Shown: positions 1 to 41,500, counted from the stretch's first letter. The stretch: DNA of 64,000 bases from Macrostomum lignano (GCA_002269645.1 NIVC01000352.1:124001-188000), one strand, 5' to 3'. Made by a program: numbers and translations. The notes: generated from the letters alone by a model not told the origin.

Positions 1-3000
1 GCCTCCAGCAGTGGTGCCTCATCTGGCGCCGAGGCCAAGTACTCGGTCGGCCGGGGCAACAAGCTGTCAGCCGAGCAGGTCAGTCGTCAAATCGATCGAC
101 AGTTGAAAGCCGACCGGGAGCTTCGACGCCACGAACGCCGCATCCTGTTGCTAGGCACTGCAGCTAGCGGTAAAAGTACATTTCTGAGATCGATGCGTAT
201 TATACACGAGGATCGATTCTCTGAGCAGGAGCTGCTCAGTTTCAAGTCAGTTATCTATTGCAATATTTGGCGCGGCCTGATGAAATTGCTGTACGTTAAA
301 AAACGGCTTGGCATTCGCTGGGAGAATAATAAAACTGGCGTACCGGCTGTTAAAGCGCTGCTGGCTCTGGAGAAGGAAATTGGCCACTCGGCGCTCATGG
401 CCTGCGGCCTGCGCGAGGATCAGTTCCTCAGGGCAGCGCCTTTTATTCAGGTATTTCTGTTTGCATGCTCTCCTGTGATTATTATCCATTAGGTCATTAG
501 GGTTTTGTTAGCTTTCCCATGATTGTCCATTAGGCCATTAGCATTTTTCTTGCTTTAATTCCCATGATGATTATCCATTAGGTCATTAGCGGTTTTCTTG
601 CTTTAATTCCTATGGTGATTATCCATTAGGTCATTGAGGTTTTCTTGCTTTAATTCCCATGATGGTTATTCATTAGGTCATTAGCGGTTTTCTTGCTTTC
701 CCATGATGATTATCCATTAGGTCATTAGCAGTTTTCTTGCTTTAATTCCCATGATGGTTATTCATTAGGTCATTAGCGGTTTTCTTGCTTTCCCATGATG
801 ATTATCCATTAGGTCATTAGCGGTTTTCTTGCTTTCCCATGATGATTATCCATTAGGTCATTAGCGGTTTTCTTGCTTTCCCATGATGATTAACCATTAG
901 GTCATTAGCGGTTTTCTTGCTTTAATCCCTATGGTGATTATCCATTAGGTCATTAGCGGTTTTCTTGCTTTAATTCCCATGATGATTAACCATTAGGTCG
1001 TTAGCGGTTTTCTTGCTTTAATTCCAATGATGATTATCCATTAGGTCATTAGCGGTTTTCTTGCTTTCCCATGATGATTATCCATTAGGTCATTAGCGGT
1101 TTTCTTGCTTTCCAATGATGATTATCCATTAGGTCATTAGCGGTTTTCTTGCTTTCCCATGATGATTATCCATTAGGTCATTAGCGGTTTTCTTGCTTTC
1201 CCATGATGATTATCCATTAGGTCATTAGCAGTTTTCTTGCTTTAATTCCCATGATGGTTATTCATTAGGTCATTAGCGGTTTTCTTGCTTTCCCATGATG
1301 ATTATCCATTAGGTCATTAGCGGTTTTCTTGCTTTCCCATGATGATTATCCATTAGGTCATTAGCGGTTTTCTTGCTTTAATCCCTATGGTGATTATCCA
1401 TTAGGTCATTAGCGGTTTTCTTGCTTTAATTCCCATGATGATTAACCATTAGGTCGTTAGCGGTTTTCTTGCTTTAATTCCAATGATGATTATCCATTAG
1501 GTCATTAGCGGTTTTCTTGCTTTCCAATGATGATTATCCATTAGGTCATTAGCGGTTTTCTTGCTTTCCCATGATGATTATCCATTAGGTCATTAGCGGT
1601 TTTCTTGCTTTCCCATGATGATTAACCATTAGGTCATTAGCGGTTTTCTTGCTTTAATTCCCATGATGATTATCCATTAGGTCATTAGCGGTTTTCTTGC
1701 TTTCCCATGATGATTATCCAGTAGGTCATTAGCAGTTTTCTTGCTTTCCCAAGAGGACTATCTATTTAGTCATAGGGTTTCGACTACTAAAATATGATTT
1801 GCCATTACCTGGGTTGGAAGGGCCAGTGTCCTATAGCTGTTTGTGAATTCCAATCCGATTGCCACATGTACAGGAAACTTTTACTAATGAAATGTTATTG
1901 GGAAACTGGCTGCTATCCGACAAGCGGCGCACTAATCGCTATCCGTATTTGATAGGAATGAGTCAATCAGGCCAGCAGCAGTCAGTTTCTTATGGGCAAG
2001 CATTAGCCAGAATATTTCTGCGCAGCGTTACTCTTGGGGATGGGGTGCAAGGGCGAATGGCCATCCTGCTTTCCCCTCTTTCTCTCTCCCCCTCTCTCCC
2101 ACAGAAACTTTCCTGCATTTCTGGTCGGTCAGTCGTACTTCAATTTTCAAACTTTTCCGGAGCTCCCTCTTGTTTTTCCTATTCGAATGATCCGCATATC
2201 AGGCTTGGCTTGGCATATCATTACAGATTCAAATAGGCGTATGTATCTATACAGGCCATGGTGGTCTGTCCGCAGTGGCTTTGCACTCTCCCTCTTCCCA
2301 CTGCTTCCCCCATTTCACCTCTGCTGGGCTTGCTACCGACAGGCCTATCTACTTCTAGTGCAGCTCTGTTGTGTTGTATTTAATGGCGGATTCTTGTCGC
2401 GCCCCCTGACTTGGCTGCTGTAGATAATAGCTTTGCCTTTTGCTATTTTTTTGTCTGCAAATGCAGTGTGTAGTAGTCCATATATACTACTGACAGTAGT
2501 TTATGATTTTCAATGAGCAGAATGAGTTTCATTAGATTTTAATTTTGTATTTTCTGTCAAATGTGTGTCAGCTGGCTACTGTGTTGTCTGTCAAATGTGT
2601 GTCAGCTGGCTACTGTGTTGTCTGTCCAATGTGTGTCAGCTGGCTACTGTGTTGTCTGTCCAATGTGTGTCAGCTGGCTACTGTGTTGTCTGTCCAATGT
2701 GTGTCAGCTGGCTACTGTGTTGTCTGTCAAATGTGTGTCAGCTAGCTACTGTGTTGTCTGTCAAATGTGTGTCAGCTGGCTACTGTGTTGTCTGTCAAAT
2801 GTGTGTCAGCTGGCTACTGTGTTGTCTGTCCAATGTGTGTCAGCTGGCTACTGTGTTGTCTGTCAAATGTGTGTCAGCTGGCTACTGTGTTGTCTGTCAA
2901 ATGTGTGTCAGCTGGCTACTGTGTTGTCTGTCAAATGTGTGTCAGCTGGCTACTGTGTTGTCTGTCAAATGTGTGTCAGCTAGCTACTGTGTTGTCTGTC

Positions 3001-4501
3001 AAATGTGTGTCAGCTGGCTACTGTGTTGTCTGTCAAATGTGTGTCAGCTAGCTACTGTGTTGTCTGTCAAATGTGTGTCAGCTGGCTACTGTGTTGTCTG
3101 TCAAATGTGTGTCAGTTGGCTACTGTGTTGTCTGTCAAATGTGTCAGCTGGCTACTGTGCCATCTCTGCATCTTCGCATGATTGAACATTGCCATGAGCT
3201 GGGAAGCTTATCACACCACACGCACAGGTTTGAATAGAATTAAAATGCTGTTTTTCACCTGCCCAGGTGCTCTGGTGCGACGCCGGAGTTCGTGAAGCAT
3301 TCGAGCGCCGGCACAGCGTACCCGGCGACGAGGAGTTCAAAGATGTCGGAGAGAATCTGGATTACTATTTGAATAGGCTCAAATCTATCTCGGTTGTTAA
3401 CTACAGGCCAACTGACGCGCACATATTGCATAGCAGGCGGTTTACTGACTCGGTAAGGCAGTTTGTCTGGCTGCGATCTGCGAACTCTTTGCTGCCTACT
3501 TGCAGTAGTTTTCAAGTGATTACTGAGAGTCAGCCCCAAGCCCTACTGAGAGTCAGCCCCAAGCCCTACTGAGAGTCAGCCCCAAACCCTACTGAGAGTC
3601 AGCCGCAAACCCACTGAGAGTCAGCCGCAAACCCTACTGAGAGTCAGCCGCAAACCCTACTGAGAGTCAGCCCCAAGCCCTACTGAGAGTCAGCCCCAAA
3701 CCCTACTGAGAGTCAGCCGCAAACCTACTGAGAGTCAGCCGCAAGCCCTACTGAGAGTCAGCCCCAAACCCTACTGAGAGTCAGCCCCAAACCTACTGAG
3801 AGTCAGCCCCAAACCCTACTGAGAGTCAGCCCCAAGCCCTACTGAGAGTCAGCCCCAAACCCTACTGAGAGTCAGCCGCAAACCCTACTGAGAGTCAGCC
3901 CCAAACCCTACTGAGAGTCAGCCGCAAACTCCACCCGCAGGTATTCGAAAAGTGCCTGCTATACGAGGGCGTGCCCCTGCGCATTATCGACATTGGCGGG
4001 CACACTAACGAGCGCCGGAAATGGTCGAAAACGTTGCGCATATTCCAGGGCGAGCTGCAGTCGGTTATCTACATAATCGCCTGTTCAACATTCAACGAAA
4101 CCTACACCAAAGCCAGCGGCGAGCTCATCAACAAGCTCGACGAGAGTTTCCTCTGTCTGCGCCACCTTCTAGACGTGAAATCGGAGCTGTTCACCCGCGA
4201 CATGAACCTGATCGTGTTCTTCAACAAAGACGACCTGTTCTCTTACAAGATCGCCAGCCTTCGTGTCGATTATTCAAAGTTCGATTCGACCTTTCCAGCT
4301 GATCGATTCGATCCGTTGGATCTCGGCCAGGTGCGCGAGCATCTGATCAGACGCCTGACCACTGTTGTGCCGCCTAATCGGCAGTTGCGCAGGTACACTC
4401 ACTTCACCACCTCGATTGATCTCAGCAATGTCAGACGGGTGTTCCGCGACATCCGGGACACTGTTATGCTCAACTTTCTCAGAGAGGCCCTGCCGGCTTA
4501 G
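1..4501 (+). CDS. Heterotrimeric G-protein alpha subunit, divergent G12/13-like; 5' end outside window. Exons <1-450, 3267-3452, 3941-4501
   Basis: Frame open from base 1. G1 box GTAASGKST, switch I LHSRRFTDSV, G3 DIGGH..ERRKW, G4 FFNKDD, G5 HFTTSID (resembles G12/13 HFTTAID). Both introns are phase 0 GT-AG (cag|gtattt..cccag|gtg; tcg|gtaagg..cgcag|gta). Confidence 0.93.
475..1750. repeat. Minisatellite, 44/48-bp unit (ATTATCCATTAGGTCATTAGCGGTTTTCTTGCTT[TAAT]TCCCATGATG), G-alpha intron 1
   Basis: Direct reading of tandem units, roughly 28 copies. Confidence 0.95.
2550..3160. repeat. Minisatellite, 34-bp unit (AATGTGTGTCAGCTGGCTACTGTGTTGTCTGTCA), G-alpha intron 1
   Basis: Tandem units; source of the Cys/Val-rich ORFs at 2545-3185. 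Confidence 0.95.
3520..3930. repeat. Minisatellite, 23-bp unit (CCCTACTGAGAGTCAGCCCCAAA), G-alpha intron 2
   Basis: Tandem units ending about 10 nt before the acceptor at 3940. Confidence 0.95.
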
Positions 4502-8267: not shown

Positions 8268-11200
8268 TCAAGAAGTGTTTTCCTCGCGTTCTATAATCTC
8301 CATTAGATCGTCCCACAGTTCTTCTTCAGACGGTGCTGCTGCTACTGCTGCCGGTGGGAATGGCTCCTGTGTGAAAAAATCTTCCTCGAATGTTCGAGTT
8401 CTCCGAGCGTCCTTGCTTAGCAGCTCCGGACATTCCAATATCCCGACTGAGGAGGCGGCGCCAGCTGACATTGGCTGCACCAGAAACTGCTCTGGCTGCT
8501 GAGGATGAAGCTCGGGTTCTGCCGCAGTTGCAGCCCCACTATCAAAGATGTTGGGTCTTGAGTACACCTGCTGCTGCTGCTGATGGACCAGATTGATGGC
8601 CGGAGGTTGCACGCTTGGCCCCAGCCCAGCCTGAGGCTGGAGAACCGGCTGCCATTGGACCAGGTTGATAGCCGGGGCTTCACGAGCTGAACAACCGGCT
8701 GCGTCTGCTGCCCAGATACGCCACTGGCGCCGGCTTGCTTGCGACGCGGTTCTGTAATTATTAATTATTTATTAATTACAGTTACAGGAGGGGGCCGTAG
8801 CCTTGTAGTATAGCGCGGCGCTCTAATGTACCAGCGGCCCAGGCTCGATTCCAAGTTCAGTCGCATTAATTTAGGGAATCTCGGCTTGGCTCTGCTCGTG
8901 CAATTAACGCCCTTGAGGGCCAACCCCCAAGGCACAGTGAAGTGTACATGCCTAACGATAAATAAAGTTAGGGCCGCTGTGGACTCCTGTGTGAGTGAGG
9001 ATGGCGGAGGCCCAGTGTGAGAATGGCGGAGGCCCAGTGTGAGGATGGCGGAGGCCCAGTGTGAGGATGGCGGAGGCCCAGTGTAAGGATGGCAGAGGCC
9101 CAGTGTGAGGATGGCGGAGGCCCAGTGTAAGGATGGCAGAGGCCCAGTGTGAGGATGGCAGAGACCCAGTGTGAGGATGGCGGAGGCCCAGTGTAAGGAT
9201 AGGCCCAGTGTGAGGATAGGCCCAGTGTGAGGATAGCAGAGTCTCAGTGTAAGGATGGCAGAGTCTCAGTGTGAGGATGGCAGAGGCCCAGTGTGACGAT
9301 GGCGGAGGCCCAGTGTGAGGATGGCGGAGGCCCAGTGTAAGGATGGCAGAGTCTCAGTGTGAGGATGGCGGAGGCCCAGTGTGAGAATGGCGGAGGCCCA
9401 GTGTGAGGATGGCGGAGGCCCAGTGTGAGGATGACGGAGGCCCAGTGTGAGGATGGCGGAGGCCCAGTGTGAGGATGGCGGAGGCCCAGTGTGAGGATGG
9501 CGGAGGCTCAGTGTGAGGATGGCGAAGGCCCAGTGTGAGGATGGCGCAGGCTCAGTGTGAGGATGGCGGAGGCCCAGTGTGAGGATGGCGGAGGCCCAGT
9601 GTGAGGATGGCGGAGGCCCAGTGTGAGGATCTGAGAAAGTTTCCGAACAAACTGAGACATAGAGAAAGGGTTGGAATCAGGTTTCTCTTGTTTTCCTGCT
9701 AACACACGGAAGAGTTACCGCGATGCTCGAATGCAGAGGACGAGCTCGCACGGGGCAGACTGAGTTGAATTGGATTCTGCTGGCTATCGCAGCTGCCGCA
9801 GCCCCATCTGAAGCGGATTGGCTCGCTTTCTGCTGCTGGCTCACTTTGAGTTTCCATGGCAACAAAGAATCGGCAAGAGAAGCAATCCAAATTGCGGCTC
9901 TCAATGATGTCAATCAGTTCAGCCGGGATGCAACTTCCAACAGGTTCAATCTCCAGCAGGTGCTGAAATGATAAATATTGTACTCATTAACGATACGAGC
10001 TAAATAAAGCAACAGACATGCCAGACTGAAGAGAAGCTGTAAAAACTCGAACTCTCACCCCAGTGTGCCGTTTCACCGGGCAGTCAAACAGTCTGAAGTC
10101 GTCAATTTGACAGGTGACCTTCAAATTTTTGCCGCCTAAAATATCGATTTTTATTTAATAGCGTTACTAATCTATAAAAAAATTTATAGCGAAACTTTGT
10201 ACTGCTCACCGCTTATCGCATCTCTCAGCAGGATGGCCAGATGGGTACTTCCAAATTTAGTACAGCAGGGCTCCGCCACAGCGGTCAGAATTTTCTCCAC
10301 TGACACTCTCGGTGCTGAATTGGGGCGGGATTGGATGTGAGTGACAATGTGATTGCATGTGAGTGACAATGTGATTGCATGTGAGTGACAATGTGATTGC
10401 ATGTGAGTGACAATGTGATTGTATGTGAGTGACAATGTGATTGCATGTGAGTGACAATGTGATTGCATGTGAGTGACAATGTGATTGGATGTGAGTGACA
10501 ATGTGATTGGATGTGAGTGACAATGTGATTGGATGTGAGTGACAATGTGATTGCATGTGAGTGACAATGTGATTGGATGTAAGTGACAATGTGATTGGAT
10601 GTGAGTGACAAAGTGATTGGATGTGAGTGACAAAGTGATTGGATGTGAGTGACAAAGTGATTGGATGTGAGTGACAAAGTGATTGGATGTGAGTGACAAT
10701 GTGATTGCATGTGAGTGACAATGTGATTGCATGTGAGTGACAATGTGATTGCATGTGAGTGACAAAGTGATTGGATGTGAGTGACAAAGTGATTGGATGT
10801 GAGTGACAAAGTGATTGCATGTGAGTGACAAAGTGATTGCATGTGAGTGACAAAGTGATTGGATGAGTTACAATGATTGCATGTGAGTGACAATGTGATT
10901 GGATGTGAGTGACAATGTGATTGGATGTGAGTGACAATGTGATTGGATGTGAGTGACAATGTGATTGGATGTGAGTGACAATGTGATTGGATGTGAGAGA
11001 CAATGTGATTGGATGTGAGTGACAATGATTGGATGTGAGTGACAATGCTTGGATGTGAGTGACAATGCTTGGATGTGAGTGACAATGCTTGGATGTGAGT
11101 GACAATGATTGGATGTGAGTGACAATGTGATTGGATGTGAGCGAAAATGTGATTGGATGCGAGCGATAATGGGATTGGATGCAAGTGACAATGATTGGAC

Positions 11201-13264
11201 GAGTAAAGCGAAGTGATTAGACGAGCGACAAAGTGATTGACGAATGGCATAAAGTGATTAGACGAGTGACATAAAGTGATTAGACGAGTGACATAAAGTG
11301 ATTAGATGAGTGACATAAAGTGATTAGACGAGTGACATGAAGTGATTAGGCGAGTGACATGAAGTGATTAGACGAGTGACATGAAGTGATTAGACGAGTG
11401 ACATGAAGTGATTAGACGAGTGACATGAAGTGATTAGACGAGTGACATGAAGTGATTAGACGAGTGACAAAGTGACAGCCGCTTACAAACGGACTGGGAG
11501 GCGGCGGCGCCGTGGGCCGGTCCGACGCCCTGGAATTCCGTTGTCGATGCCTCAGTGCGGTTATCTACCTCGGGTAGGTAGAAATTGATTCGAAGTTTTT
11601 TTACTGTTTTTGCCGAAAAATTTACGCCGGGATCTGAAATTCAAAAATAAAAACTCGTGCTTCTTAAAACACAGGAGAAACGAGCAAAGGAAATTCACCT
11701 GACATACCTGCAATATTTATATTGAAGTTTTCAAGAGTCGCCTTTTTACTAGCCATCGCCTCTCTCCACTTACTCTGCTGACAGGACCGCACCATCACGC
11801 GATCCAGACTGCAACGGGATATGACAGTGAAAAATAAAAATGTCTGTCTGATCTAATCCTCTTAACACCAATCCAGATCCTCCTCCTCCCCACCAATCCA
11901 TATCCCCCTCCCCACTAATCCAGATCCCCCTCCCCACTAATCCATATCCCCCTCCCCACCAATCCAGATCCCCTCCCCACCAATCCAGATCCCCCTCCCC
12001 ATCAATCCAGATCCCCTTCCTCACCAATCCAGATCCCCCTCCCCATCAATCCAGATCCCCCTCCCCATCAATCCAGACCCCCTTTCCCTCCAATCCAGAC
12101 CCCCTTCCCCACCAATCCATACCCCCTTCCCCATCAATCCAGATCCCCCTCCCCACCAATCCGGATCCTCCTCCCCACCAATCCAGATTCTCCTCCCCAC
12201 CAATCCAGATCCTCCTCCCCACCAATCCAGATCCTCCTCCCCACCAATCCAGATCCCCCTCCCCACCAATCCAGATCCCCTTTCCCTCCAATCCAGATCC
12301 CCTTTCCCTCCAATCCAGATCCCCTTCCCCACCAATCCAGATCCCCCTCCCCATCAATCCAGATCCCCGTCCTCACCAATCCAGACCCCCCTCCTCATCA
12401 ATCCAGATCCCCTTCCTCACCAATCCAGATCCCTCCCCATCAATCCAGACCCCCCTCCCCATCAATCCAGATCCCCTTCCTTACCAATCCAGATCCCTCC
12501 CCATCAATCCAGATCCCCTTCCCCACCAATCCAGCTCCCCTTCCCCACCAATCCAGATCCCCCCTCCCCACCAATCCAGCTCCCCTTCCCCACCAATCCA
12601 GATCCCCTTCCCCACCAATCCAGATCCCCCTCCCCATCAATCCATACCCCCTCCCCATCAATCCAGATTCCCTTCCCCATCAATCCAGATCCCACTCCCA
12701 ACCAATCCAGATCCCCCTCCCCATTAATCCAGATCCCCTTCCCCACCAATCCAGATCCCCCTCCCCACCAATCCAGACCCCCCTCCCCATCAATCCGGAT
12801 CCCCTTTCTCACCAATCCAGATCCCCCTCCCCATCAATCCAGATCCCCTTCCTCACCAATCCAGACCCCCTTTCCCTCCAATCCAGATCTCATTCCTCGA
12901 CCATTTAGATGCCACAGCCAGCTTACAGCTTTTAAACAAGCCAAGTGATTCATGCTCACCGGACCAGCGCTTTCTCTTCGCCAGCAGGAATAGTAACAAC
13001 CTTCTTGAATATGCCATCAGTGCAGCTGTTGCCATCCAATTGATACGGGTGATTCTCGCCATCTACACTAACCAAAACAGCTATAACTGTGCACTGAAGT
13101 AAGCTTGATGGACCTGCGACCTCGCCTAATTTTCGCTGAACAGCCAATGTCACGCACTGACCTTCCAATTGGCCTCGCAAGTACAGAGTCTCATTTAAAT
13201 TTCGAGTGCGGGCATTGCCAAGTGGACAAGTGGGTGCAGGCTGCACTTCAATGCGCATATACAT
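8268..13264 (-). CDS. Divergent Rel-homology-domain transcription factor (NF-kB/Rel/NFAT family). Exons 13264-12960, 11808-11708, 11633-11487, 10314-10210, 10135-10059, 9962-9719, 8751-8268; apparent 1-nt frameshift at 8674-8677; ~487 aa when corrected
   Basis: All six introns are GT-AG with matching phases (2,1,1,1,0,1). Motifs: YMRIEVQP (NFATc LRIEVQP, RelA YVEIIEQP); RTRNLNE (RelA RFRYKCE, NFAT5 RARYLTE); HPYQLDGNSCTDGIF (RelA HPHELVGKDCRDGFY); KLRINFYLP; SEPIRFRW (RelA SEPMEFQY); basic PRRKQ after the IPT domain; Gln-rich/acidic tail ending EELWDDLMEII. Confidence 0.82.
8790..9000 (+). mobile_element. tRNA-derived SINE; 3' part replaced by a minisatellite
   Basis: tRNA-like head with B-box-like GGCTCGATTCC; about 200 bp nearly identical to 26885-27075. 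Confidence 0.75.
8990..9630. repeat. Minisatellite, 22-bp unit (GTGTGAGGATGGCGGAGGCCCA), Rel-like intron 6
   Basis: Tandem units starting in the SINE's GTGTGAG tract. Confidence 0.95.
10325..11478. repeat. Minisatellite, 20-22-bp unit (GTGATTGGATGTGAGTGACAAT, grading to GTGATTAGACGAGTGACATGAA); fills Rel-like intron 3
   Basis: Tandem units reach to within about 10 nt of both splice sites. Confidence 0.95.
11865..12890. repeat. Pyrimidine-rich minisatellite, ~21-22-bp unit (CCAATCCAGATCCCCCTCCCCA), Rel-like intron 1
   Basis: Tandem units; source of the Gly/Trp-rich ORFs. Confidence 0.95.
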
Positions 13265-14504: not shown

Positions 14505-14900
14505 TCATGTCAAACATAAAAGAAGCATTATGTCAAACATAAAGAAGCATCATGTCAAACATCATGTCAAACATCATGTCAAACATAAAGAAGCATCATG
14601 TCAAACATAAAAGAAGCATCATGTCAAACATAAAGAAGTATCATGTCAAATGTAAAGAAGCATCATGTCAAACATAAAAGAAGCATCATGTCAAACATAA
14701 AGAAGTATCATGTCAAATGTAAAGAAGCATCATGTCAAACATAAAAGAAGCATCATGTCAAACATAAAGAAGCATCATGTCAAACATAAAGAAGTATCAT
14801 GTCAAATGTAAAGAAGCATCATGTCAAACATAAAGAAGCATCATGTCAAACATAAAGAAGCATCATGTCAAACATAAAGAAGCATCATGTCAAACATTCT
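14505..14900. repeat. Minisatellite, 22-23-bp unit (CATCATGTCAAACATAAAGAAG)
   Basis: Tandem units within an AT-rich block. Confidence 0.95.
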
Positions 14901-20062: not shown

Positions 20063-21412
20063 ATGCCGTACTACAACTGGGTCTACTTTGTCCAGCTGGC
20101 AATCGTTGCTGGCGTGATGGTCATTCTGTTCCTGCTGGTTTTTTCCCACACAATGGCCATCATTTTCGCAAGATCCCACTTTTACAAGAAGGTAGCTTTC
20201 GAGCCGGCCGCTGTCGAGGCCGGCCTGCCCGGCGTGTCCATCATCAAGCCGCTGGTTGGCATAGACAAGAATGTGTACAGCAACCTGGAGACCTACTTCA
20301 GGCTGGACTATCCCCGTTACGAGCTGCTGTTCTGCCTGGAGAGCGCGGACGATGCCGTCACTATGGTGGTGGACACACTGATGCAAAAGTACCCCAAAGT
20401 AGACACCCGGGTATTTACGTCACCTGTGCGTCACAACGTCAATCCCAAGATCAACAACATGATGCAGGGCTACTCAGCAGCAAAGTACGACCTCGTGATG
20501 GTCTCAGACAGCGGCGTTAAAATGCGACCAGAGGCGCTGATGGACATGGTTTGGTGCATGTCGCAAAAGGATATCGGAATTGTCCACCAGATGCCATTCA
20601 TTGAGCAGCGACCTGGCTTTCGCAACTTGGCCCATTCCACGCATTTTGGCTGCACGCATGCCAAGTTTTACATTAGCGCCCACTGTCTGGGGATCAACTG
20701 CTGCACAGGAATGTCCTGCCTGCTGCGCAAGCCCGTCATCGACAAGAAGCCGGGCGGTCTCGCCTACTTCGGCCGCTACCTAGCCGAGGATTTCTTCGTG
20801 GCGCAGCACTTCATTGAAAACGGTTACAAGATGACGCTGTCGCACTATCCCGCGCTGCAGGACGGCAGTGGAGAAGTTAGAGGTCTGCGTAGGCGTCTGA
20901 TACGCTGGCTGCAGCTGCGCGTCGCAATGGTGCCACAGCTGGTGAGTAAATGCGGCGCTCAATGACAGCTAATAACCATCGAGTTTTAGTGTATTGGGAT
21001 TTCAAAAGTTTACGCAAGTTCCCTAATAAATACTGCTCTCCAGGTGGTACTCGAGATGCTTGCCGAGTGCCTCGTGTCCGGCGCCATGGGTGCCTGGGCG
21101 TTCGCTTTCCTGCTTCCGAGCCTGGTCAATCCAATTGTGTACTTTCTAACCCACTGCCTGATCTGGTTGCTGGCCGACTATACCCTGCTGTGCAGCTGCC
21201 TGGACCCGGCCGAGCCGCTCATGTTCAGCCGGCTGGCGTTCATGTTCACGTGGCTATTCTGGATCGGAACCCAGCCGATCACGGTGGTTCGATCGCTCTT
21301 CCACTCAGAGATTGTCTGGCGGGACAAGCGCTTCCGGCTGCAGTGGGGCGGCAACACGGTGGAGCTGCCAGGCCTGCCTGTCAACCTCAGCGCTGCCAAG
21401 CAGGCAGTTTGA
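20063..21412 (+). CDS. UGCG: Ceramide glucosyltransferase (glucosylceramide synthase, GT21). Exons 20063-20941 and 21044-21412; 415 aa
   Basis: N-terminal TM helix, GVSIIKPLVG, NPKINN, SDSG, TGMSCLLRK, LAEDFF, RxxRW (RLIRW), hydrophobic C-terminus. Phase-0 GT-AG intron 20942-21043. Confidence 0.95.
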
Positions 21413-23869: not shown

Positions 23870-26800
23870 GTTTCAGCCATTTCTGCCGCTGCCAGAAAAG
23901 AAGTTCATCTGAAAGAGTGAAAAAACACAATGATGGGTTCTACTATCAGTAGCATGAAGTAGAGAACAACATTTTTATATTTGCCAACGAAACTTACTAC
24001 CTGCGTATTAGCTGGAGAAGCAATAAAGTAAGCTCTGGTGAGATTCACCCAATGGAGAGTGAGACTCCTTCGATTGAGAGTGAGACTCCTTCGATTAAGA
24101 GTGAGACTCCTTCGATTGAGAGTGAGACTCCTTCGATTAAGAGTGAGACTCCTTCGATTAAGAGTGAGACTCTTTCGATGGAGAGTGAGACTCCTTCTTT
24201 TGAGAGTGAGACTCCTTCGATTAAGAGTGAGACTCCTCCGATAGAGAGTGAGACTCCTCCGATGGAGAGTGAGACTCCTCCGATGGAGAGTGAGACTCTC
24301 CTAACTAACTAACTAACGGAGAGCAAGACTCAGACTCAGAAGAGATATGATACGAGTCTTAGCCAACTGATTTCTCTGCTTCATGTTGACCGATAATGAC
24401 ATGAGGACAATCTTAAAACAGTAATAAGAGATAATAATAATACTTCAGCTATTTGCTTACCACGGTGTCGCTGAGGGCATTGAAACTGGATCGCCTTGAG
24501 GAGCCCGAGTCACCGGCAGCCCGATCCTGCAGCAGTTCAGTCATGTAGGGGTTGTTGTTGCTATTCTCAGACTTCAAGAGAACACTGCTGACTCCGCTTG
24601 AGCACAGAATCCAGTTTGCCGGACTCAATAGAAAGTTTTAGATGGACATGAATGTCATTTTACTAAGTGTAAGTCTCCAAGTGGAGCGCCTTAGTCTACA
24701 GGGGGTGGTATAGGGCATGGGGAACCCTGGTACCAAAATTTTGCCGATATGTAGTATCAATGAGGCACCATCACAAACCCAAAAAACCACAACTCCGAAA
24801 GTACTTCCCATCATAAACCCGAAATATCCCAAACCCGAAATATCCCAAACCCGAAATATCACAAACCCGAAATATCACAAACCCGAAATATCACAAACCC
24901 GAAATATCACAAACCCGAAATATCACAAACCCGAAATATCACAAACCCGAAATATCACAAACCCGAAATATCACAAACCCGAAATATCACAAACCAAAAG
25001 TATCACAAACCCGAAATATCACAAACCCGAAATATCACAAGCCAGAAGTATCACAAACCCGAAATATCCCAAACCCGAAATATCACAAACCCGAAATATC
25101 ACAAACCCGAAATATCACAAACCAAAAGTATCACAAAACCGAAATATCACAAACCCGAAATATCACAAACCCGAAATATCACAAGCCAGAAGTATCACAA
25201 ACCCGAAATATCACAAACCCGAAAAATCACACACCCGAAATATCACAAACCCGAAATATCACAAACCCGAAATATCACAAACCTGAAATATCACAAACCC
25301 AAAATATCACAAACCCGAAATATCACAAACCCGAAATATCACAAACCCGAAATATCACAAACCCAAAATATCACAAACCCGAAATATCACACACCCGAAG
25401 TATCACAAACCCGAAGTATCACAAACCCGAAATATCACACACCCGAAATATCACAAACCCGAAATATCACAAACCCGAAATATCACAAACCCGAAATATC
25501 ACAAACCCGAAATATCACAAACCAAAAATATCACAAACCCGAAATATCACAAACCCGAAATATCACAAGCCAGAAGTATCACAAACCCGAAATATCCCAA
25601 ACCCGAAATATCACAAACCCGAAATATCACAAACCCGAAATATCACAAACCAAAAGTATCACAAAACCGAAATATCACAAACCCGAAATATCACAAACCC
25701 GAAATATCACAAGCCAGAAGTATCACAAACCCGAAATATCACAAACCCGAAAAATCACACACCCGAAATATCACAAACCCGAAATATCACAAACCCGAAA
25801 TATCACAAACCTGAAATATCACAAACCCAAAATATCACAAACCCGAAATATCACAAACCCGAAATATCACAAACCCGAAATATCACAAACCCAAAATATC
25901 ACAAACCCGAAATATCACACACCCGAAGTATCACAAACCCGAAATATCACAAACCCGAAATATCACACACCCGAAATATCACAAACCCGAAATATCACAA
26001 ACCCGAAATATCACAAACCCGAAATATCACAAACCCGAAATATCACAAACCCGAAATATCACAAACCCGAAATATCACAAACCCGAAATATCACAAACCC
26101 GAAATATCACAAACCCGAAATATCACAAACCCGAAATATCACAAACCTGAAATATCCCAAACTCAAAATATCACAAACCCGAAATATCACAAACCCCAAA
26201 AGTTCTAGCAACCTCCAACGGTACTTTTTGTTTTCGGAGTTGTGATATTTCGGGTTTTTATGCCCCCCCCGTATCAATCCACATAACCTTCTAGCTTCAG
26301 AAACATTCGTGTTTTTATAAAAACCCCATCATATTAGAAACTACGCTCTCATTAGGCTTCAATGGACCGCCCATTGACCGCCCCAAGCTATTCCCGTTCC
26401 AGCGGACGCACCGGCGTGAGGTTGCACGTTGACGGTCTCCGGCTTGACAGCTTGGAGCCGGGCGGCGAGAAGAACTGATGACCTTCAGCTGTGGTGCCGC
26501 CTGCGGCAAGACTTCCGCCGCTACCGCTGCACCCGCTGCCGCCGTGAGCCCCGGCGAATGATGAAGCTACTGAGGAGCTGCCAGCTGCCGATTGCGGAGA
26601 CGTGTTGACGCTGTGCCGCCTTGGCTGCACCGCCGTCGGCAGGGAGAGCGTGAAGCTGCGGTTGGCGTCTTCCTGGAAATGTTGCCATTTTAAGATACGT
26701 TTGTAAAAAATGCTCACGTGTCTTATTGACAATACTAGTCAAAAATAACATTGAAAGAAAGTGGTGTAGGTTTAATATCCCGGGAAAAATAATACACGTA

Positions 26801-38500: not shown

Positions 38501-41500
38501 CGAGTTATACACTTTAGCCAATCAGCGACAAGGAGAGGATAAACGGGGTTAGACCCTTCAGCCAATCAGCGACGAGGAGGGTCTAAACGGGGCTTGGATC
38601 TTCAGCCAATCAGCGACGAGGAGAGGCTAAACAGGGCTTGAACCTTCAGCCAATCAGCGACGAAGCTAGACTAAAAGAGTTAGAGCCCAGTCATTTAGGT
38701 AAGAATCGATTAAGTTAAACAGGACCAATAATCTTCCGTCAAACAGCTTGCTCAAGGCAGCTGTCCTTAGCGCTTTCACTCACCTTGGAAAACAACTGCG
38801 CGGTGGGTCGGTGACGCGCCTCCCTGTCCAGCAGTTTCTCCACACTGTCGGCCAGTTCGTGGGGTAGCGCAGACAGCGCCTGGGGCAGAATTTTCGGCAG
38901 CTGCAGTGCGGCCAGTGACAGAAAGTCTGTTGAACTGCCTGCTGACACTATCTACTAGCAGTCTGCTGACACTACCTACTAGCAGCCTGCTGACACTACC
39001 TACTGGCAGCCTGCTGACACTACCTACTGGCAGCCTGCTGACACTACCTACTAGCAGCCTGCTGACACTACCTACTAGCAGCCAGCTGACACTACCTACT
39101 AGCAGCCTGCTGACACTACCTACTAGCAGCCAGCTGACACTACCTACTAGCAGCCTGCTGACACTACCTACTAGCAGCCTGCTGACACTACCTACTAGCA
39201 GCCAGCTGACACTACCTACTAGCAGCCTGCTGACACTACCTACTAGCAGCCTGCTGACACTACCTACTAGCAGCCTGCTGACACTACCTACTAGCAGCCT
39301 GCTGACACTACCTACTGGCAGCCTGCTGACACTACCTACTAGCAGCCTGTTGACACTACCTACTAGCAGCCAGCTGACACTTACCTACTGGCAGTCTGCT
39401 GACACTACCTACTGGCAGCCTGCTGACACTACCTACTAGCAGCCTGCTGACACTACCTACTAGCAGCCAGCTGACACTACCTACTAGCAGTCTGCTGACA
39501 CTACCTACTAGCAGCCTGCTGACACTACCTACTAGCAGCCTGCTGACGCTACCTACTAGCATTCTGCTGACACTACCTACTAGCAGCCTGCTGGCACTAC
39601 CTACTGGCAGTCTGCTGACACTACCTACTAGCAGCCTGCTGACACTACCTACTGGCAGCCTGCTGACACTACCTACTGGCAGCCTGCTGACACTACCTAC
39701 TAGCAGCCTGCTGACACTACCTACTGGCAGCCTGCTGACACTACCTACTAGCAGCCTGCTGACACTACCTACTAGCATTCTGCTGACACTACCTACTAGC
39801 AGCCTGCTGACACTACCTACTAGCAGCCTGCTGACACTACCTACTGGCAGCCTGCTGACACTACCTACTAGCAGCCTGCTGGCACTACCTACTGGCAGTC
39901 TGCTGGCACTACCTACTGGCAGTCTGCTGACACTATCTACTAGCAGCCTGCTGACACTACCTACTAGCAGCCAGCTGACACTACCTACTAGCAGCCTGCT
40001 GGCACTACCTACTGGCAGTCTGCTGACACTACCTACTAGCAGCCTGCTGACACTACCTACTGGCAGCCTGCTGACACTACCTACTGGCAGCCTGCTGACA
40101 CTACCTACTAGCAGCCTGCTGACACTACCTACTGGCAGCCTGCTGACACTACCTACTAGCATTCTGCTGACACTACCTACTAGCATTCTGCTGACACTAC
40201 CTACTAGCAGCCTGCTGACACTACCTACTAGCAGCCTGCTGACACTACCTACTAGCAGCCTGCTGACACTACCTACTAGCAGTCTGCTGACACTACCTAC
40301 TGGCAGCCTGCTGACACTACCTACTGGCAGCCTGCTGACACTACCTACTAGCAGCCTGCTGACACTACCTACTAGCAGCCTGCTGACACTACCTACTAGC
40401 AGCCAGCTGACACTACCTACTAGCAGCCTGCTGACACTACCTACTAGCATTCTGCTGACACTACCTACTAGCAGCCTGCTGACACTACCTACTAGCAGCC
40501 TGCTGACACTACCTACTAGCAGTCTGCTGACACTACCTACTAGCAGCCTGCTGACACTACCTACTGGCAGCCTGCTGACACTACCTACTGGCAGCCTGCT
40601 GACACTACCTACTGGCAGTCTGCTGACACTACCTAACAGCAGCCTGCTGACACTACCTACTAGCAGCCTGCTGACACTACCTACTAGCAGCCTGCTGACA
40701 CTACCTACTGGCAGCCTGCTGACACTACCTACTAGCAGCCTGCTGACACTACCTACTAGCAGCCTGCTGACACTACCTACTGGCAGCCTGCTGACACTAC
40801 CTACTGGCAGCCTGCTGACACTACCTACTAGCAGCCTGCTGACACTACCTACTGGCAGTCTGCTGACACTACCTACTGGCAGCCTGCTGACACTACCTAC
40901 TAGCAGCCTGCTGACACTACCTACTAGCAGTCTGCTGACACTACCTACTAGCAGCCTGCTGACACTACCTACTGGCAGCCTGCTGACACTACCTACTGGC
41001 AGCCTGCTGACACTACCTACTGGCAGCCTGCTGACTGTGAAGGAGTCGCCTACCTGCTAGCACTAGTACTGACACTGCTGACACTACCTACTAGCAGCCT
41101 GCTGACACTACCTACTAGCAGTCTGCTGACACTACCTACTGGCAGCCTGCTGACACTACCTACTGGCAGCCTGCTGACACTACCTACTGGCAGCCTGCTG
41201 ACACTACCTACTGGCAGCCTGCTGACACTACCTACTAGCAGCCTGCTGACTGTGAAGGAGTCGCCCGCAGAAATCGAGGATCAAAATCATAAATGGGGAT
41301 CAAGGAAAGGCAGCTGGGCTGCCAGAAAGCCCCTCCAGACATCGTCATCCTTCAATTTTCCTGCCTCCTTAAAAAAGCTCTAAAAACTGCTCCCTGATCC
41401 CCATAATCCCCATTTTTCGCCACTCGCAGGCATGTCCTTTGTTGATGTCGATAAACCCGGGCAGCTCTGTTTAATTAAAGATCCCCGACTAAGACTCCTA

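What the first reader, a model, noticed from the sequence alone, without database searches (positions are those of the whole stretch)
8268..13264. Highly divergent Rel/NF-kB-type transcription factor with mixed NFAT/Rel features, invisible in the ORF track
Seen: seven phase-consistent exons, separated by repeat-filled introns, assemble an RHD, IPT, basic patch and Gln-rich/acidic tail. The N-terminal strand is NFAT-like (RIEVQP) while the HPYQLDGNSCTDG and SEPIRFRW segments and the C-terminal activation-like tail are RelA-like. The recognition loop RTRNLNE keeps the base-contacting R-x-R..E (RelA R33/R35/E39) but replaces Y36 and the redox Cys38, and has a longer linker. Established: canonical NF-kB is generally reported absent from planarians and parasitic flatworms (recalled from literature; verify). 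Inference: if this genome is a basal flatworm, this may be a retained or neofunctionalised NF-kB-family factor with altered DNA specificity.
Basis: partly seen in the sequence, partly recalled or inferred. Interest (0 to 1): 0.85.

Follow-up and report, generated by a model that had tools for sequence, protein, structure and literature searches.

The report
Divergent Rel-type transcription factor gene
This is a real seven-exon gene of the flatworm Macrostomum lignano that encodes a very diverged relative of the NF-kB/Rel transcription factors; databases already list it as an uncharacterised 'RHD domain' protein, so it is useful for flatworm immune-signalling evolution but is not a new kind of gene.

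Summary
Spliced, they reproduce GenBank PAA84984.1 (Macrostomum lignano BOX15_Mlig005807g2; UniRef name 'RHD domain-containing protein').

One correction: in this window a C4 run (8674-8677) shifts the frame of the last exon. The Gln-rich/acidic tail is in frame only in the sister copy (C5) and in the paralogue.

Standard sequence searches do not detect an RHD:
- Pfam and PDB searches find nothing.
- A search of 1.84 billion representative proteins finds only the protein itself.

Three other tests do support Rel homology:
- Co-linear similarity to an RHD profile is weak but non-random (z about 4.5, p about 1e-3), confined to the N-terminal domain, and Rel scores above NFAT.
- Five of the six introns lie at, or within 4 residues of, RHD-family intron positions in the same phase (P about 1e-3 to 5e-6). 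Two of these positions are found in RELA and Dorsal but not in NFAT5.
- A model of the C-terminal domain alone (pLDDT 64) repeatedly matches Rel/NFAT dimerisation domains.

M. lignano has a separate, conventional NFAT5-like gene, so this gene is not the NFAT5 orthologue.

Verdict: a highly divergent Rel-lineage factor whose hallmark DNA-recognition residues have changed and whose function is untested. Moderately interesting.

The parts
12960..13264 (-). Exon 1 (305 nt, codons 1-102, ends in phase 2). Contains the start ATG, RIEVQP (13255-13238), candidate recognition loop A RTRNLNE (13210-13190), candidate loop B YLRGQLEG (13183-13160) and the Rel-type motif HPYQLDGNSCTDG (13051-13013).
   Evidence: In-frame TAA at 13267-13265, with no AG between it and RIEVQP. 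Donor GTGAGC. The phase-2 intron at R102 falls in the same alignment column as RELA S112 and the NFAT5 intron in both the profile alignment and the MAFFT alignment.
11708..11808 (-). Exon 2 (101 nt; LDRVMVRSCQQSKWREAMASKKATLENFNINIA). Counterpart of the 92-nt RELA exon that encodes FQNLGIQCVKK...NNPFQ.
   Evidence: Bounded by a phase-2 and a phase-1 intron, as in RELA.
11487..11633 (-). Exon 3 (147 nt; contains KLRINF, aligned with the RelA strand VRLCF). Counterpart of the 132-nt RELA exon.
   Evidence: Phase-1 introns on both sides, as in RELA and Dorsal.
10210..10314 (-). Exon 4 (105 nt; PRVSVEKILTAVAEPCCTKFGSTHLAILLRDAIS). Encodes the first strands of the IPT/dimerisation domain. Same length and same phases (1/1) as the RELA exon encoding APNTAELKICRV...LLCDKVQK.
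   Evidence: This exon is skipped in the older ML2 gene models P0003, P0004 and P0126.
10059..10135 (-). Exon 5 (77 nt; GKNLKVTCQIDDFRLFDCPVKRHTG). Ends in phase 0, at or within 2 residues of the ancient phase-0 intron seen in NFAT5 and in ant Dorsal.
   Evidence: The paralogue L001 carries a 6-nt in-frame insertion here.
9719..9962 (-). Exon 6 (244 nt). Covers the rest of the IPT-like domain including SEPIRFRW (9827-9804), followed by a Ser-rich linker.
   Evidence: In the domain-only AlphaFold model this region has pLDDT 65-81.
8268..8751 (-). Exon 7 coding part. Contains the basic patch PRRKQ (8749-8735), a Gln/Pro-rich stretch, and an acidic C-terminus ...EEELWDDLMEIIEREENTS with stop TGA at 8270-8268. 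In this window the spliced frame leaves the conserved frame at the C-run and stops at 8419-8417.
8674..8677 (-). Homopolymer run: C4 on the coding strand, where the sister copy has C5. This is the frameshift site; it truncates the annotated product to 437 aa.
   Evidence: the window reads GTGAAGCCCCGGCTATC and L002 reads GTGAAGCCCCCGGCTATC. P0003, from an independent assembly, carries the same Q43 allele with an intact tail.
11866..12889 (.). Intron 1 tandem array (22-bp unit, about 47 copies).
10329..11469 (.). Intron 3: two adjoining tandem arrays, both with 22-bp units (about 40 and about 13 copies).
8995..9630 (.). Intron 6 tandem array (22-bp unit, about 29 copies).
   Evidence: Array lengths differ between the three genomic copies.

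Best explanation
The locus is one of three near-identical genomic copies of a transcribed Macrostomum lignano gene (Mlig005807/Mlig020545). It descends from the Rel/NF-kB branch of the Rel-homology-domain family but has diverged beyond the reach of standard sequence models. The intact product, about 487 aa, has the layout of a class-II Rel protein: a basic N-terminal RHD-type domain (aa about 4-184), an acidic Ig-like IPT/dimerisation domain (about 185-300), a Ser-rich linker, a short basic patch (RRK, 329-331) where Rel and Dorsal carry their nuclear localisation signal, a Gln/Pro-rich stretch, and an acidic-hydrophobic C-terminus (last 60 aa net charge -11) of the kind that acts as an activation domain. 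It has no ankyrin repeats. Shown: the gene structure, its identity with the database gene model, homology to the Rel family, an Ig-like C-terminal domain that resembles RHD dimerisation domains, and the frame break in this copy. Inferred: it acts as a dimeric, signal-regulated nuclear transcription activator, and its DNA-recognition code differs from kB-site binders, because the equivalents of Tyr36, Cys38 and most other RelA contact positions are replaced. The C4-for-C5 frameshift in this window is most likely a homopolymer error of the long-read assembly rather than a biological truncation.
For: Gene model: the seven GT-AG exons give a product 100% identical to PAA84984.1. The GenBank annotation of this assembly was built from RNA-seq and transcriptome assemblies (PMC5730564). 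Source annotation: UniRef names four of the six family members 'RHD domain-containing protein'. Sequence: a custom 17-sequence RHD HMM aligns aa 68-139 to profile positions 66-135 at 7.7 bits, a score reached by 1 of 2000 shuffles. A global profile alignment gives z 4.4-4.6, reached by 0-1 of 2000-3000 shuffles. The signal lies in the N-terminal domain (all-family profile z 4.8, Rel-only z 4.1, NFAT-only z 1.3). hhalign gives a co-linear match with P 0.014. The Rel motif pattern occurs once against 3e-4 expected. Gene structure: the introns at R102 (phase 2) and G220 (phase 1) coincide exactly with RELA S112 and E222. S185 (phase 1) is 1 residue from R187, D136 (phase 1) is 4 residues from V143, and G245|H246 (phase 0) is 2 residues from the NFAT5 and ant-Dorsal intron. 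The exon between the third and fourth introns is 105 nt in both genes. Monte Carlo P runs from 1.5e-3 for exact matches to 6.5e-5 at +/-2 residues and 5e-6 at +/-4. Fold: a domain-only AlphaFold model of aa 177-307 (pLDDT 64.5, pTM 0.58), built from this family's sequences alone, finds c-Rel, NFAT1, RelB, RelA and p50 chains among its top 50 PDB matches. These include the highest TM-scores of the list (0.51-0.55). Charge: N-domain +3 (pI 8.6) and IPT -3 (pI 5.6), against +4 (8.8) and -2 (5.4) in RelA; the tail is net -13. Tail constraint: between paralogues dN/dS is 0.44, all indels are in frame, and the last 13 residues are identical. Frameshift as error: exon 7 of the window differs from the sister copy only by the missing C, and the same Q43 allele has an intact tail in an independent assembly (P0003).
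Against: Pfam RHD_DNA_bind and RHD_dimer give no hit at E<=10. phmmer against PDB finds nothing. phmmer against 1.84 billion representatives finds only the protein itself. The hallmark loop F-R-Y-x-C-E-G is absent, and its register is ambiguous. The IPT region shows no sequence similarity above chance (z 0.1-0.4). The full-length AlphaFold model was unusable (pLDDT 32), so the N-terminal fold is unverified. The Foldseek E-values for RHD chains are individually weak (0.013-0.05), and C2, FN3 and Ig domains are interleaved with them. The RHD exons differ between paralogues by only 4 synonymous and 8 non-synonymous changes, and the intron ends are equally conserved, so purifying selection on the RHD cannot be shown. 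By exon-anchored alignment most RelA DNA-contact positions outside loop L1 are not conserved; which positions contact DNA comes from my knowledge of the RelA structures. There are no expression, localisation or DNA-binding data.
Confidence: 0.7

Rival explanations
1. The protein is Rel-derived but no longer a sequence-specific DNA binder. It would keep the dimerisation domain and tail but have lost the kB-type contact set, acting for example as a cofactor, a dominant partner of another RHD protein, or a fast-evolving lineage-specific factor with another role.
For: The positions equivalent to Tyr36 and Cys38 are replaced in both possible loop registers. By exon-anchored alignment K122/K123 become Q/S, R187 becomes S185, and K218/Q220/K221 become D/I/S (the contact list is from my knowledge of the RelA-DNA structures). 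Eight of the 12 RHD differences between paralogues are non-synonymous.
Against: The N-domain keeps a RelA-like basic charge (+3, pI 8.6). An R-x-R...E or R...E-G loop is still present. A basic patch in NLS position and an acidic C-terminus under constraint fit a nuclear activator.
Confidence: 0.2
2. The copy in this window is a true pseudogene or truncated allele. On this reading the missing C is real, and this redundant copy of a partly duplicated genome makes a 437-aa protein without the activation tail.
For: The frameshift is present in the window, and the deposited gene model is truncated accordingly. The DV1 line assembly is known to hold about 180 Mb of duplicated blocks, so redundant copies could decay (PMC5730564).
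Against: There is no other disabling change: exon 7 is otherwise 483/483 identical to the intact sister copy. The site is a homopolymer, a typical long-read error site. The same Q43 allele has an intact tail in the independent ML2 assembly (P0003).
Confidence: 0.15
3. The resemblance is due to chance. On this reading the protein is an unrelated lineage-specific beta-rich protein that happens to carry a few Rel-like motifs.
For: No Pfam, PDB or deep phmmer hit. hhalign probability is only 3%. The IPT region shows no sequence signal.
Against: Three independent lines agree. Co-linear profile similarity gives p about 1e-3. Intron position and phase coincidence gives P about 1e-3 to 5e-6. RHD chains recur among the fold matches of a model built without any RHD sequence. 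The UniRef RHD naming adds to this.
Confidence: 0.04
4. The gene is an ordinary NFAT5 (TonEBP) orthologue.
For: RIEVQP is identical to NFATc2. The phase-2, phase-1 and phase-0 ancient introns are also present in NFAT5 genes.
Against: An NFAT-only profile gives z 1.1-1.3. NFAT5 orthologues are strongly conserved, including one in the fluke Paragonimus (P0201), and pass Pfam. M. lignano has its own NFAT5-like protein, P0202 (E 2.7e-18, with KPHGYYQACRVSGK...DCVGILKLRNADVE). Two introns of this gene are shared with RELA and Dorsal but not with the two NFAT5 genes examined.
Confidence: 0.02

Closest known systems
Class-II Rel proteins (RelA/p65, c-Rel, Dorsal)
   Same: Same order of parts: RHD N-domain, IPT domain, short basic patch, then a C-terminal acidic activation-type tail, with no ankyrin repeats. 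It carries the Rel-type motif HP..L.G..C.DG. The exon structure matches RELA: introns of phase 2, 1, 1, 1 and exons of 101/147/105 nt against 92/132/105 nt in RELA. Two of these intron positions were seen in RELA and Armadillidium Dorsal but not in NFAT5. The charge split between the two domains is similar.
   Different: In the hhalign match only 16% of 136 aligned columns are identical, and the protein scores below every Pfam threshold. The FRYxCEG loop is replaced (Tyr36 and Cys38 lost). By alignment, most other RelA DNA-contact positions and the RRPS site are not conserved. The IPT domain has an extra predicted helix between strands (aa about 259-267), and a 24-aa Ser-rich insert precedes the basic patch. 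The first ancient RHD intron (HPTIK|I, phase 0) is missing.
NFAT5/TonEBP and NFATc proteins
   Same: They belong to the same superfamily. The N-terminal hexapeptide RIEVQP is identical to NFATc2. The ancient introns are shared. NFAT1 chains are among the best fold matches of the IPT model.
   Different: There is no NFAT-type profile signal, and the NFAT motifs (RAHYETEG, KPHxFYQ, DCxGILKLRN) are absent. A separate NFAT5-like gene exists in the same species.
Highly divergent RHD transcription factors of the planarian Schmidtea mediterranea (Development 2026, PMC13563047)
   Same: Both are flatworm RHD proteins on long branches with low similarity to immune NF-kB, existing alongside a well conserved NFAT5. 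The phylum lacks canonical TLRs and p50/p105.
   Different: I could not compare them directly because no sequences were held. No flatworm protein outside M. lignano was detectable with this protein as query, so orthology to any planarian RHD gene is unknown.

Membership tests
Rel homology domain superfamily (Rel/NF-kB/NFAT) | Match to Pfam RHD_DNA_bind (PF00554) at or above the gathering score | tested here: not met
   No hit even at E<=10. Canonical members found here all carry it.
Rel homology domain superfamily (Rel/NF-kB/NFAT) | Match to Pfam RHD_dimer (PF16179) | tested here: not met
   No hit. A global profile test of the IPT region gives z 0.1-0.4.
Rel homology domain superfamily (Rel/NF-kB/NFAT) | Match to the PROSITE RHD profile, which I take (from memory) to be the basis of the UniProt name 'RHD domain-containing protein' | not testable with these tools
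   UniRef gives that name to A0A267GHZ8 (this gene), A0A267DXY1, A0A267DXX1 and A0A1I8G5S6. Two exon-4-skipped models are instead named 'Arrestin_C domain-containing'.
Rel homology domain superfamily (Rel/NF-kB/NFAT) | Signature DNA-recognition loop R-x-(F/A)-R/H-Y-x-(C/T)-E-G | tested here: not met
   The loop reads RTRNLNET (profile register) or YLRGQLEG (MAFFT register). Tyr and Cys are absent in both; Arg and Glu are kept.
Rel homology domain superfamily (Rel/NF-kB/NFAT) | Co-linear sequence similarity to a family profile beyond chance | tested here: met
   The signal is weak but reproducible. The local HMM scores 7.7 bits, reached by 1 of 2000 shuffles. The global profile gives z 4.4-4.8, reached by 0-1 of 2000-3000 shuffles, in the N-domain only.
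Rel homology domain superfamily (Rel/NF-kB/NFAT) | Family-typical intron positions and phases | tested here: met
   Two introns match exactly, a third lies within 1 residue, a fourth within 2 and a fifth within 4, all in the same phase. The comparison set was RELA, two Dorsal genes and two NFAT5 genes. P is 1.5e-3 to 5e-6.
Rel homology domain superfamily (Rel/NF-kB/NFAT) | Two-domain fold: RHD-N beta-sandwich plus IPT dimerisation domain | tested here: inconclusive
   The IPT model (pLDDT 64.5) finds c-Rel, NFAT1, RelB, RelA and p50 among its top 50 matches, with the best TM-scores, but E-values are 0.013-0.05. The N-domain could not be modelled (pLDDT about 30).
NF-kB class I (p105/p100/Relish) | C-terminal ankyrin-repeat (IkB-like) region | tested here: not met
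   No Pfam hit in the 166-aa tail. The tail is Gln/Pro-rich and acidic.
Rel class II (RelA/c-Rel/Dorsal) | RHD followed by an NLS and a C-terminal activation domain; Rel-type gene structure | tested here: inconclusive
   The layout and composition fit. The introns at PFQ|V and K221|E222 are shared with RELA and Armadillidium Dorsal and were not seen in two NFAT5 genes. No class-I gene was examined, and activation and NLS function are untested.
NFAT/NFAT5 | NFAT-type RHD sequence; the single conserved orthologue per invertebrate genome | tested here: not met
   The NFAT-only profile gives z 1.1-1.3. A distinct NFAT5-like protein, P0202, exists in M. lignano.

The most novel reading that the evidence does not exclude
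This gene would be the surviving Rel/NF-kB-lineage gene of a phylum that lost Toll-like receptors and p105-type NF-kB. It would have kept the ancestral Rel exon structure and domain plan while rewriting its DNA-recognition loop, with no Tyr36 and no redox-sensitive Cys38. It would then work as a signal-dependent activator with a new DNA specificity in a TLR-independent stress or immune pathway of a flatworm that can be made transgenic.
Probability: 0.25. Interest if true: 0.6.

Novelty: new member of a known kind. Interest (0 to 1): 0.4.

Why it matters
Whether flatworms have a working NF-kB/Rel factor is unsettled. TLRs are absent from M. lignano and other flatworms (PMC8609888). p50/p105 is reported absent from the phylum (PMC11432056). 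In planarians only 'highly divergent' RHD genes without a clear immune role have been found (PMC13563047). This locus shows that a basal flatworm keeps a gene with Rel-type exon structure and domain layout even though its sequence has drifted out of reach of Pfam. The practical lesson is that surveys based on Pfam or BLAST will under-count this family, and that intron positions can recover such members. M. lignano supports transgenesis, so the function of a diverged flatworm Rel protein can be tested directly. The gene itself is already deposited and auto-annotated, so the gain is in interpretation, not in discovery of a new kind of element.

Tried and rejected
- Pfam hmmscan of the spliced RHD part and of the tail gave no relevant hit.
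- phmmer against PDB found nothing.
- Exhaustive phmmer against 1.84 billion representatives found only the protein's own cluster, so no orthologues were available to deepen the alignment.
- AlphaFold2 on the full protein with a 4-sequence alignment gave pLDDT 32. Its Foldseek matches were generic Ig/FN3 folds and I disregarded them.
- hhalign in -glob mode produced a meaningless end-overlap alignment. I replaced it with my own semi-global profile alignment calibrated on shuffles.
- MAFFT L-INS-i of the protein with RHD genes misaligned the central region, so only the phase-2 intron could be compared in that alignment.
- I tried to show purifying selection on the RHD from the paralogues. The intron ends are as conserved as the exons and only 12 coding differences exist, so this was uninformative.
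- I considered feeding AlphaFold an alignment that contained canonical RHD proteins and rejected it as circular.
- Four of ten genomic look-ups, for three p65 models and one Dorsal model, were not on record.
- Graef et al. 2001 on Rel-domain exon structure is not held.
- The planarian paper has no supplement held.
- The gene identifiers appear in no searchable paper.
- NFAT5 orthology was considered and rejected.

Full report
WHAT IS IN THE SEQUENCE. The feature lies on the minus strand. Three-frame translation and inspection of splice sites give seven exons: 13264-12960, 11808-11708, 11633-11487, 10314-10210, 10135-10059, 9962-9719 and 8751 onward. Every intron starts with GT and ends with AG, and the splice phases are compatible. 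An in-frame TAA lies directly before the ATG, and no AG dinucleotide lies between it and the RIEVQP codons, so translation starts at 13264. Introns 1, 3 and 6 are filled by tandem arrays that all have a 22-bp period but different units.

IDENTITY AND DATABASE STATUS. The spliced product is 100% identical to GenBank PAA84984.1, 'hypothetical protein BOX15_Mlig005807g2' of Macrostomum lignano. UniRef (A0A267GHZ8) names it 'RHD domain-containing protein'.
- The same assembly holds a sister copy, Mlig005807g1 (P0125, 487 aa, locus L002), and a paralogue, Mlig020545g1 (P0002, 488 aa, locus L001). Both have the same neighbours.
- The DV1 line assembly is known to contain about 180 Mb of duplicated blocks.
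- Its GenBank annotation was derived from RNA-seq (StringTie/TACO) and a de novo transcriptome. Transcripts at least 95% identical share a name prefix (PMC5730564). The exon junctions therefore have indirect transcript support. I could not inspect reads.
- No paper in the searchable library mentions either gene identifier.

THE FRAME BREAK. In the spliced frame the last exon of this window reads ...QLVKP-RLSTWSNG... and stops at 8419-8417, giving a 437-aa product.
- The sister copy has GTGAAGCCCCCGGCTATC where the window has GTGAAGCCCCGGCTATC. This single missing C, in the run at 8674-8677, is the only difference in the 483-nt exon.
- A protein from the older, independent ML2 assembly (P0003) carries the window's Q43 allele together with the intact tail.
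- I therefore read the frameshift as a probable homopolymer error of the long-read assembly. A real truncated allele remains possible at about 0.15.
- 'Seven phase-consistent exons' is thus true for the junctions but not for the interior of exon 7 in this window.

IS IT A REL HOMOLOGY DOMAIN? SEQUENCE TESTS.
- Pfam gives no RHD_DNA_bind or RHD_dimer hit even at E<=10.
- phmmer against all PDB sequences finds nothing.
- An exhaustive phmmer search of 1.84 billion representative proteins finds only the protein's own cluster.
- This is less damning than it looks. RelA itself does not find any NFAT chain in PDB at E<=1e-3.

The two NFAT sequences, and the RelA sequence used as anchor, were verified residue by residue against PDB entries. 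p50 and Dorsal were not verified. That affects only the power of the tests, not their validity, because the null distributions use the same profile.
- A local HMM aligns aa 68-139 to profile positions 66-135 in the right register through HPYQLDGNSCTDG. It scores 7.7 bits, reached by 1 of 2000 shuffled queries.
- A semi-global profile alignment gives z 4.4-4.6, reached by 0-1 of 2000-3000 shuffles.
- The signal sits entirely in the N-terminal domain: z 4.8 with all sequences, 4.1 with Rel only, 1.3 with NFAT only. The IPT region gives z 0.1-0.4.
- hhalign gives a co-linear match (aa 60-210 against 55-197) at P 0.014.
- The pattern H[PA]..L.G..C.[DE]G occurs once in the six-frame translation of the window, against 3e-4 expected.

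Taken alone, this is suggestive (p about 1e-3) but not proof.

GENE STRUCTURE, AN INDEPENDENT TEST. I mapped exon boundaries exactly for five genes: Bos mutus RELA, Armadillidium and Ooceraea Dorsal, and Capitella and Larimichthys NFAT5. The positions below are converted to human RelA numbering (the Bos model's numbering plus 2).

The RHD family has these recurrent introns:
- a: HPTIK|I, phase 0. Present in all five genes.
- b: S112, phase 2. Present in RELA and NFAT5.
- c: PFQ|V143, phase 1. Present in RELA and both Dorsals, not in NFAT5.
- d: R187, phase 1. Present in all five.
- e: K221|E222, phase 1. Present in RELA and Armadillidium Dorsal, not in NFAT5.
- f: Q247|V248, phase 0. Present in NFAT5 and ant Dorsal.
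- g: just after the domain, phase 1. Present in four of the five genes; the short Capitella NFAT5 model ends before this point.

The flatworm gene has introns at R102 (phase 2), D136 (phase 1), S185 (phase 1), G220 (phase 1), G245|H246 (phase 0) and E327 (phase 1).
- In the profile alignment made earlier, without any reference to introns, R102 falls on S112 and G220 on E222 exactly.
- S185 is 1 residue from d, H246 is 2 residues from f, and D136 is 4 residues from c.
- MAFFT independently puts R102 in the same column as b.
- The run of phases (2, 1, 1, 1) and exon lengths (101, 147, 105 nt) mirrors RELA (2, 1, 1, 1; 92, 132, 105 nt). The exon between d and e is 105 nt in both genes.
- A Monte Carlo with random intron placement gives P 1.5e-3 for the two exact matches, 6.5e-5 at +/-2 residues and 5e-6 at +/-4 residues.
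- Intron g has a counterpart in the same phase just before the basic patch, but it lies 24 residues further from the last strand. I did not count it.
- Intron a is missing.

Together with the sequence signal, this makes homology with the Rel family the only reasonable reading. Sharing c and e points to the Rel/NF-kB branch rather than NFAT. The caveat is that only five genes were sampled and none was a class-I gene.

FOLD. The full-length AlphaFold model, built on four near-identical sequences, was unusable (pLDDT 32). A model of aa 177-307 alone, built from this family's sequences only and therefore not circular, reached pLDDT 64.5 and pTM 0.58, with a seven-strand sandwich plus one helix.
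- Foldseek against PDB gave no match with E<=1e-3.
- The top 50 matches nevertheless include NFAT1 (four entries), c-Rel, RelB, RelA and p50. The IPT-like DBB domain of BCAP also appears.
- These carry the highest query-normalised TM-scores of the list, 0.50-0.55.
- RHD chains are a tiny fraction of the 350,542 chains searched, so their recurrence is informative, but I rate the fold test as inconclusive-positive.
- The N-terminal fold remains untested.

NOT NFAT5. A search with the human NFAT5 RHD recovered conserved NFAT5 proteins from annelids, molluscs, arthropods and a fluke. It also recovered an M. lignano protein, P0202 (A0A1I8IZ70, E 2.7e-18), which carries KPHGYYQACRVSGK and DCVGILKLRNADVE. 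The species therefore has a conventional NFAT5-type gene elsewhere. The only specifically NFAT-like trait of the window gene is the hexapeptide RIEVQP.

DNA-CONTACT RESIDUES. The list of RelA contact residues is from my knowledge of the RelA-DNA crystal structures, not from a tool.
- MAFFT instead places Y28-L-R30-G-Q-L-E34-G35 there, followed by RKLGEVAG opposite RSAGSIPG.
- The register is therefore open, but Tyr36 and Cys38 are lost in both.
- By exon-anchored alignment K122/K123, R187 and K218/Q220/K221 correspond to Q/S, S and D/I/S.
- The N-domain is still basic (+3, pI 8.6, against +4, 8.8 in RelA) and the IPT domain acidic (-3 against -2).
- Altered specificity is plausible, and loss of DNA binding cannot be excluded.

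THE TAIL AND SELECTION.
- After the IPT domain come a Ser-rich linker, the patch PRRKQ, Gln/Pro-rich repeats (PAINLVQ/PAINLVH) and an acidic end. The last 60 aa have net charge -11 and include LWDDLMEII.
- Between the sister copy and the paralogue, the tail has dS 0.28, dN 0.12 and omega 0.44. All indels are multiples of three and the last 13 residues are identical. This is evidence that the tail is coding and constrained.
- The RHD exons differ by only 4 synonymous and 8 non-synonymous changes (dS 0.018), and the unique intron ends are equally identical. The 5' part has therefore been homogenised or duplicated very recently, and it says nothing about selection.

CONTEXT AND LITERATURE.
- TLRs are absent from M. 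lignano and other flatworms (PMC8609888).
- A survey reports no p50/p105 in Platyhelminthes (PMC11432056).
- A 2026 study reports seven RHD genes in S. mediterranea that are 'highly divergent' from invertebrate NF-kB, a well conserved NFAT5, and no effect of the best NF-kB-like candidate on its assay (PMC13563047).

MECHANISM AND VERDICT. Most likely (about 0.7 for the overall picture, about 0.9 for Rel-family descent) this is a diverged class-II-like Rel factor. It would dimerise through the IPT domain, enter the nucleus through the basic patch, bind DNA through the basic N-domain with a changed recognition code, and activate transcription through the acidic C-terminus. Only the anatomy and the homology are shown; every functional step is inferred. 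Rival readings, with my confidence in each:
- A Rel-derived protein that no longer binds DNA: 0.2.
- A truly truncated copy in this window: 0.15.
- Chance resemblance: 0.04.
- NFAT5 orthology: 0.02.

The gene is a new, extremely divergent member of a known family, already deposited and auto-named. Interest is moderate (0.4).

SURROUNDINGS.
- Downstream, in convergent orientation: the 3' exon of a G-alpha gene (3971-4501, plus strand).
- Upstream, in divergent orientation: a family-21 glycosyltransferase (20063-20965, plus strand).
- At the far end of the window: an EML-type beta-propeller exon (62382-62981, minus strand).
- The G-alpha and glycosyltransferase neighbours also flank the sister copy L002, and G-alpha also flanks the paralogue L001.

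Noticed in passing
window 8995-9630, 10329-11193, 11192-11469, 11866-12889, 14505-14897: Five tandem arrays within 6 kb all have a 22-bp period but different consensus units. Three of them fill introns of the gene, and copy numbers differ between the three genomic copies. Most other arrays in the window also have periods of 15-24 bp. The shared period across unrelated units is unexplained.
   Followed up: partly
L002 versus L001 (paralogous loci); window exons 1-6 versus exon 7: Divergence between the paralogues jumps from dS 0.018 in exons 1-6 (intron ends about 100% identical) to dS 0.28 in exon 7, with 80-90% identity in the flanks. This pattern suggests gene conversion or a recombinant origin of the 5' part.
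   Followed up: partly
window 10210-10314 (exon 4); proteins P0003, P0004, P0126: Gene models from the older ML2 assembly join exon 3 directly to exon 5, an in-frame loss of 35 codons that removes the first strands of the IPT domain. Two of these three models (P0003, P0126) are auto-named 'Arrestin_C domain-containing protein' instead of RHD. I did not determine whether this is real alternative splicing or a prediction artefact.
   Followed up: no
protein P0202 (M. lignano A0A1I8IZ70), not in the window: M. lignano has a conventional NFAT5-like RHD protein (a 192-aa fragmentary model, 50% identical to human NFAT5 over the matched part). The fluke Paragonimus has one too (P0201).
   Followed up: partly
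window 10059-10135 (exon 5) versus L001 13903-13985: The paralogue has a 6-nt in-frame insertion plus substitutions, changing DDFRLFDC to DDFSCRPFDC inside a predicted strand region of the IPT-like domain.
   Followed up: no
window 3971-4501 (+), 20063-20965 (+), 62382-62981 (-): Neighbouring genes are a G-protein alpha subunit (last exon, Pfam E 2e-24), a glycosyltransferase of family 21 (E 5e-43) and an EML-type beta-propeller exon (E 9e-41). G-alpha and the glycosyltransferase also flank the sister copy L002, and G-alpha also flanks the paralogue L001.
   Followed up: partly
window 24810-26200, 38937-41250, 56155-58784: Three large satellite arrays (16 bp x 87 copies, 24 bp x 96, 57 bp x 46) account for the strong AT/GC-skew excursions in the composition profile.
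   Followed up: no
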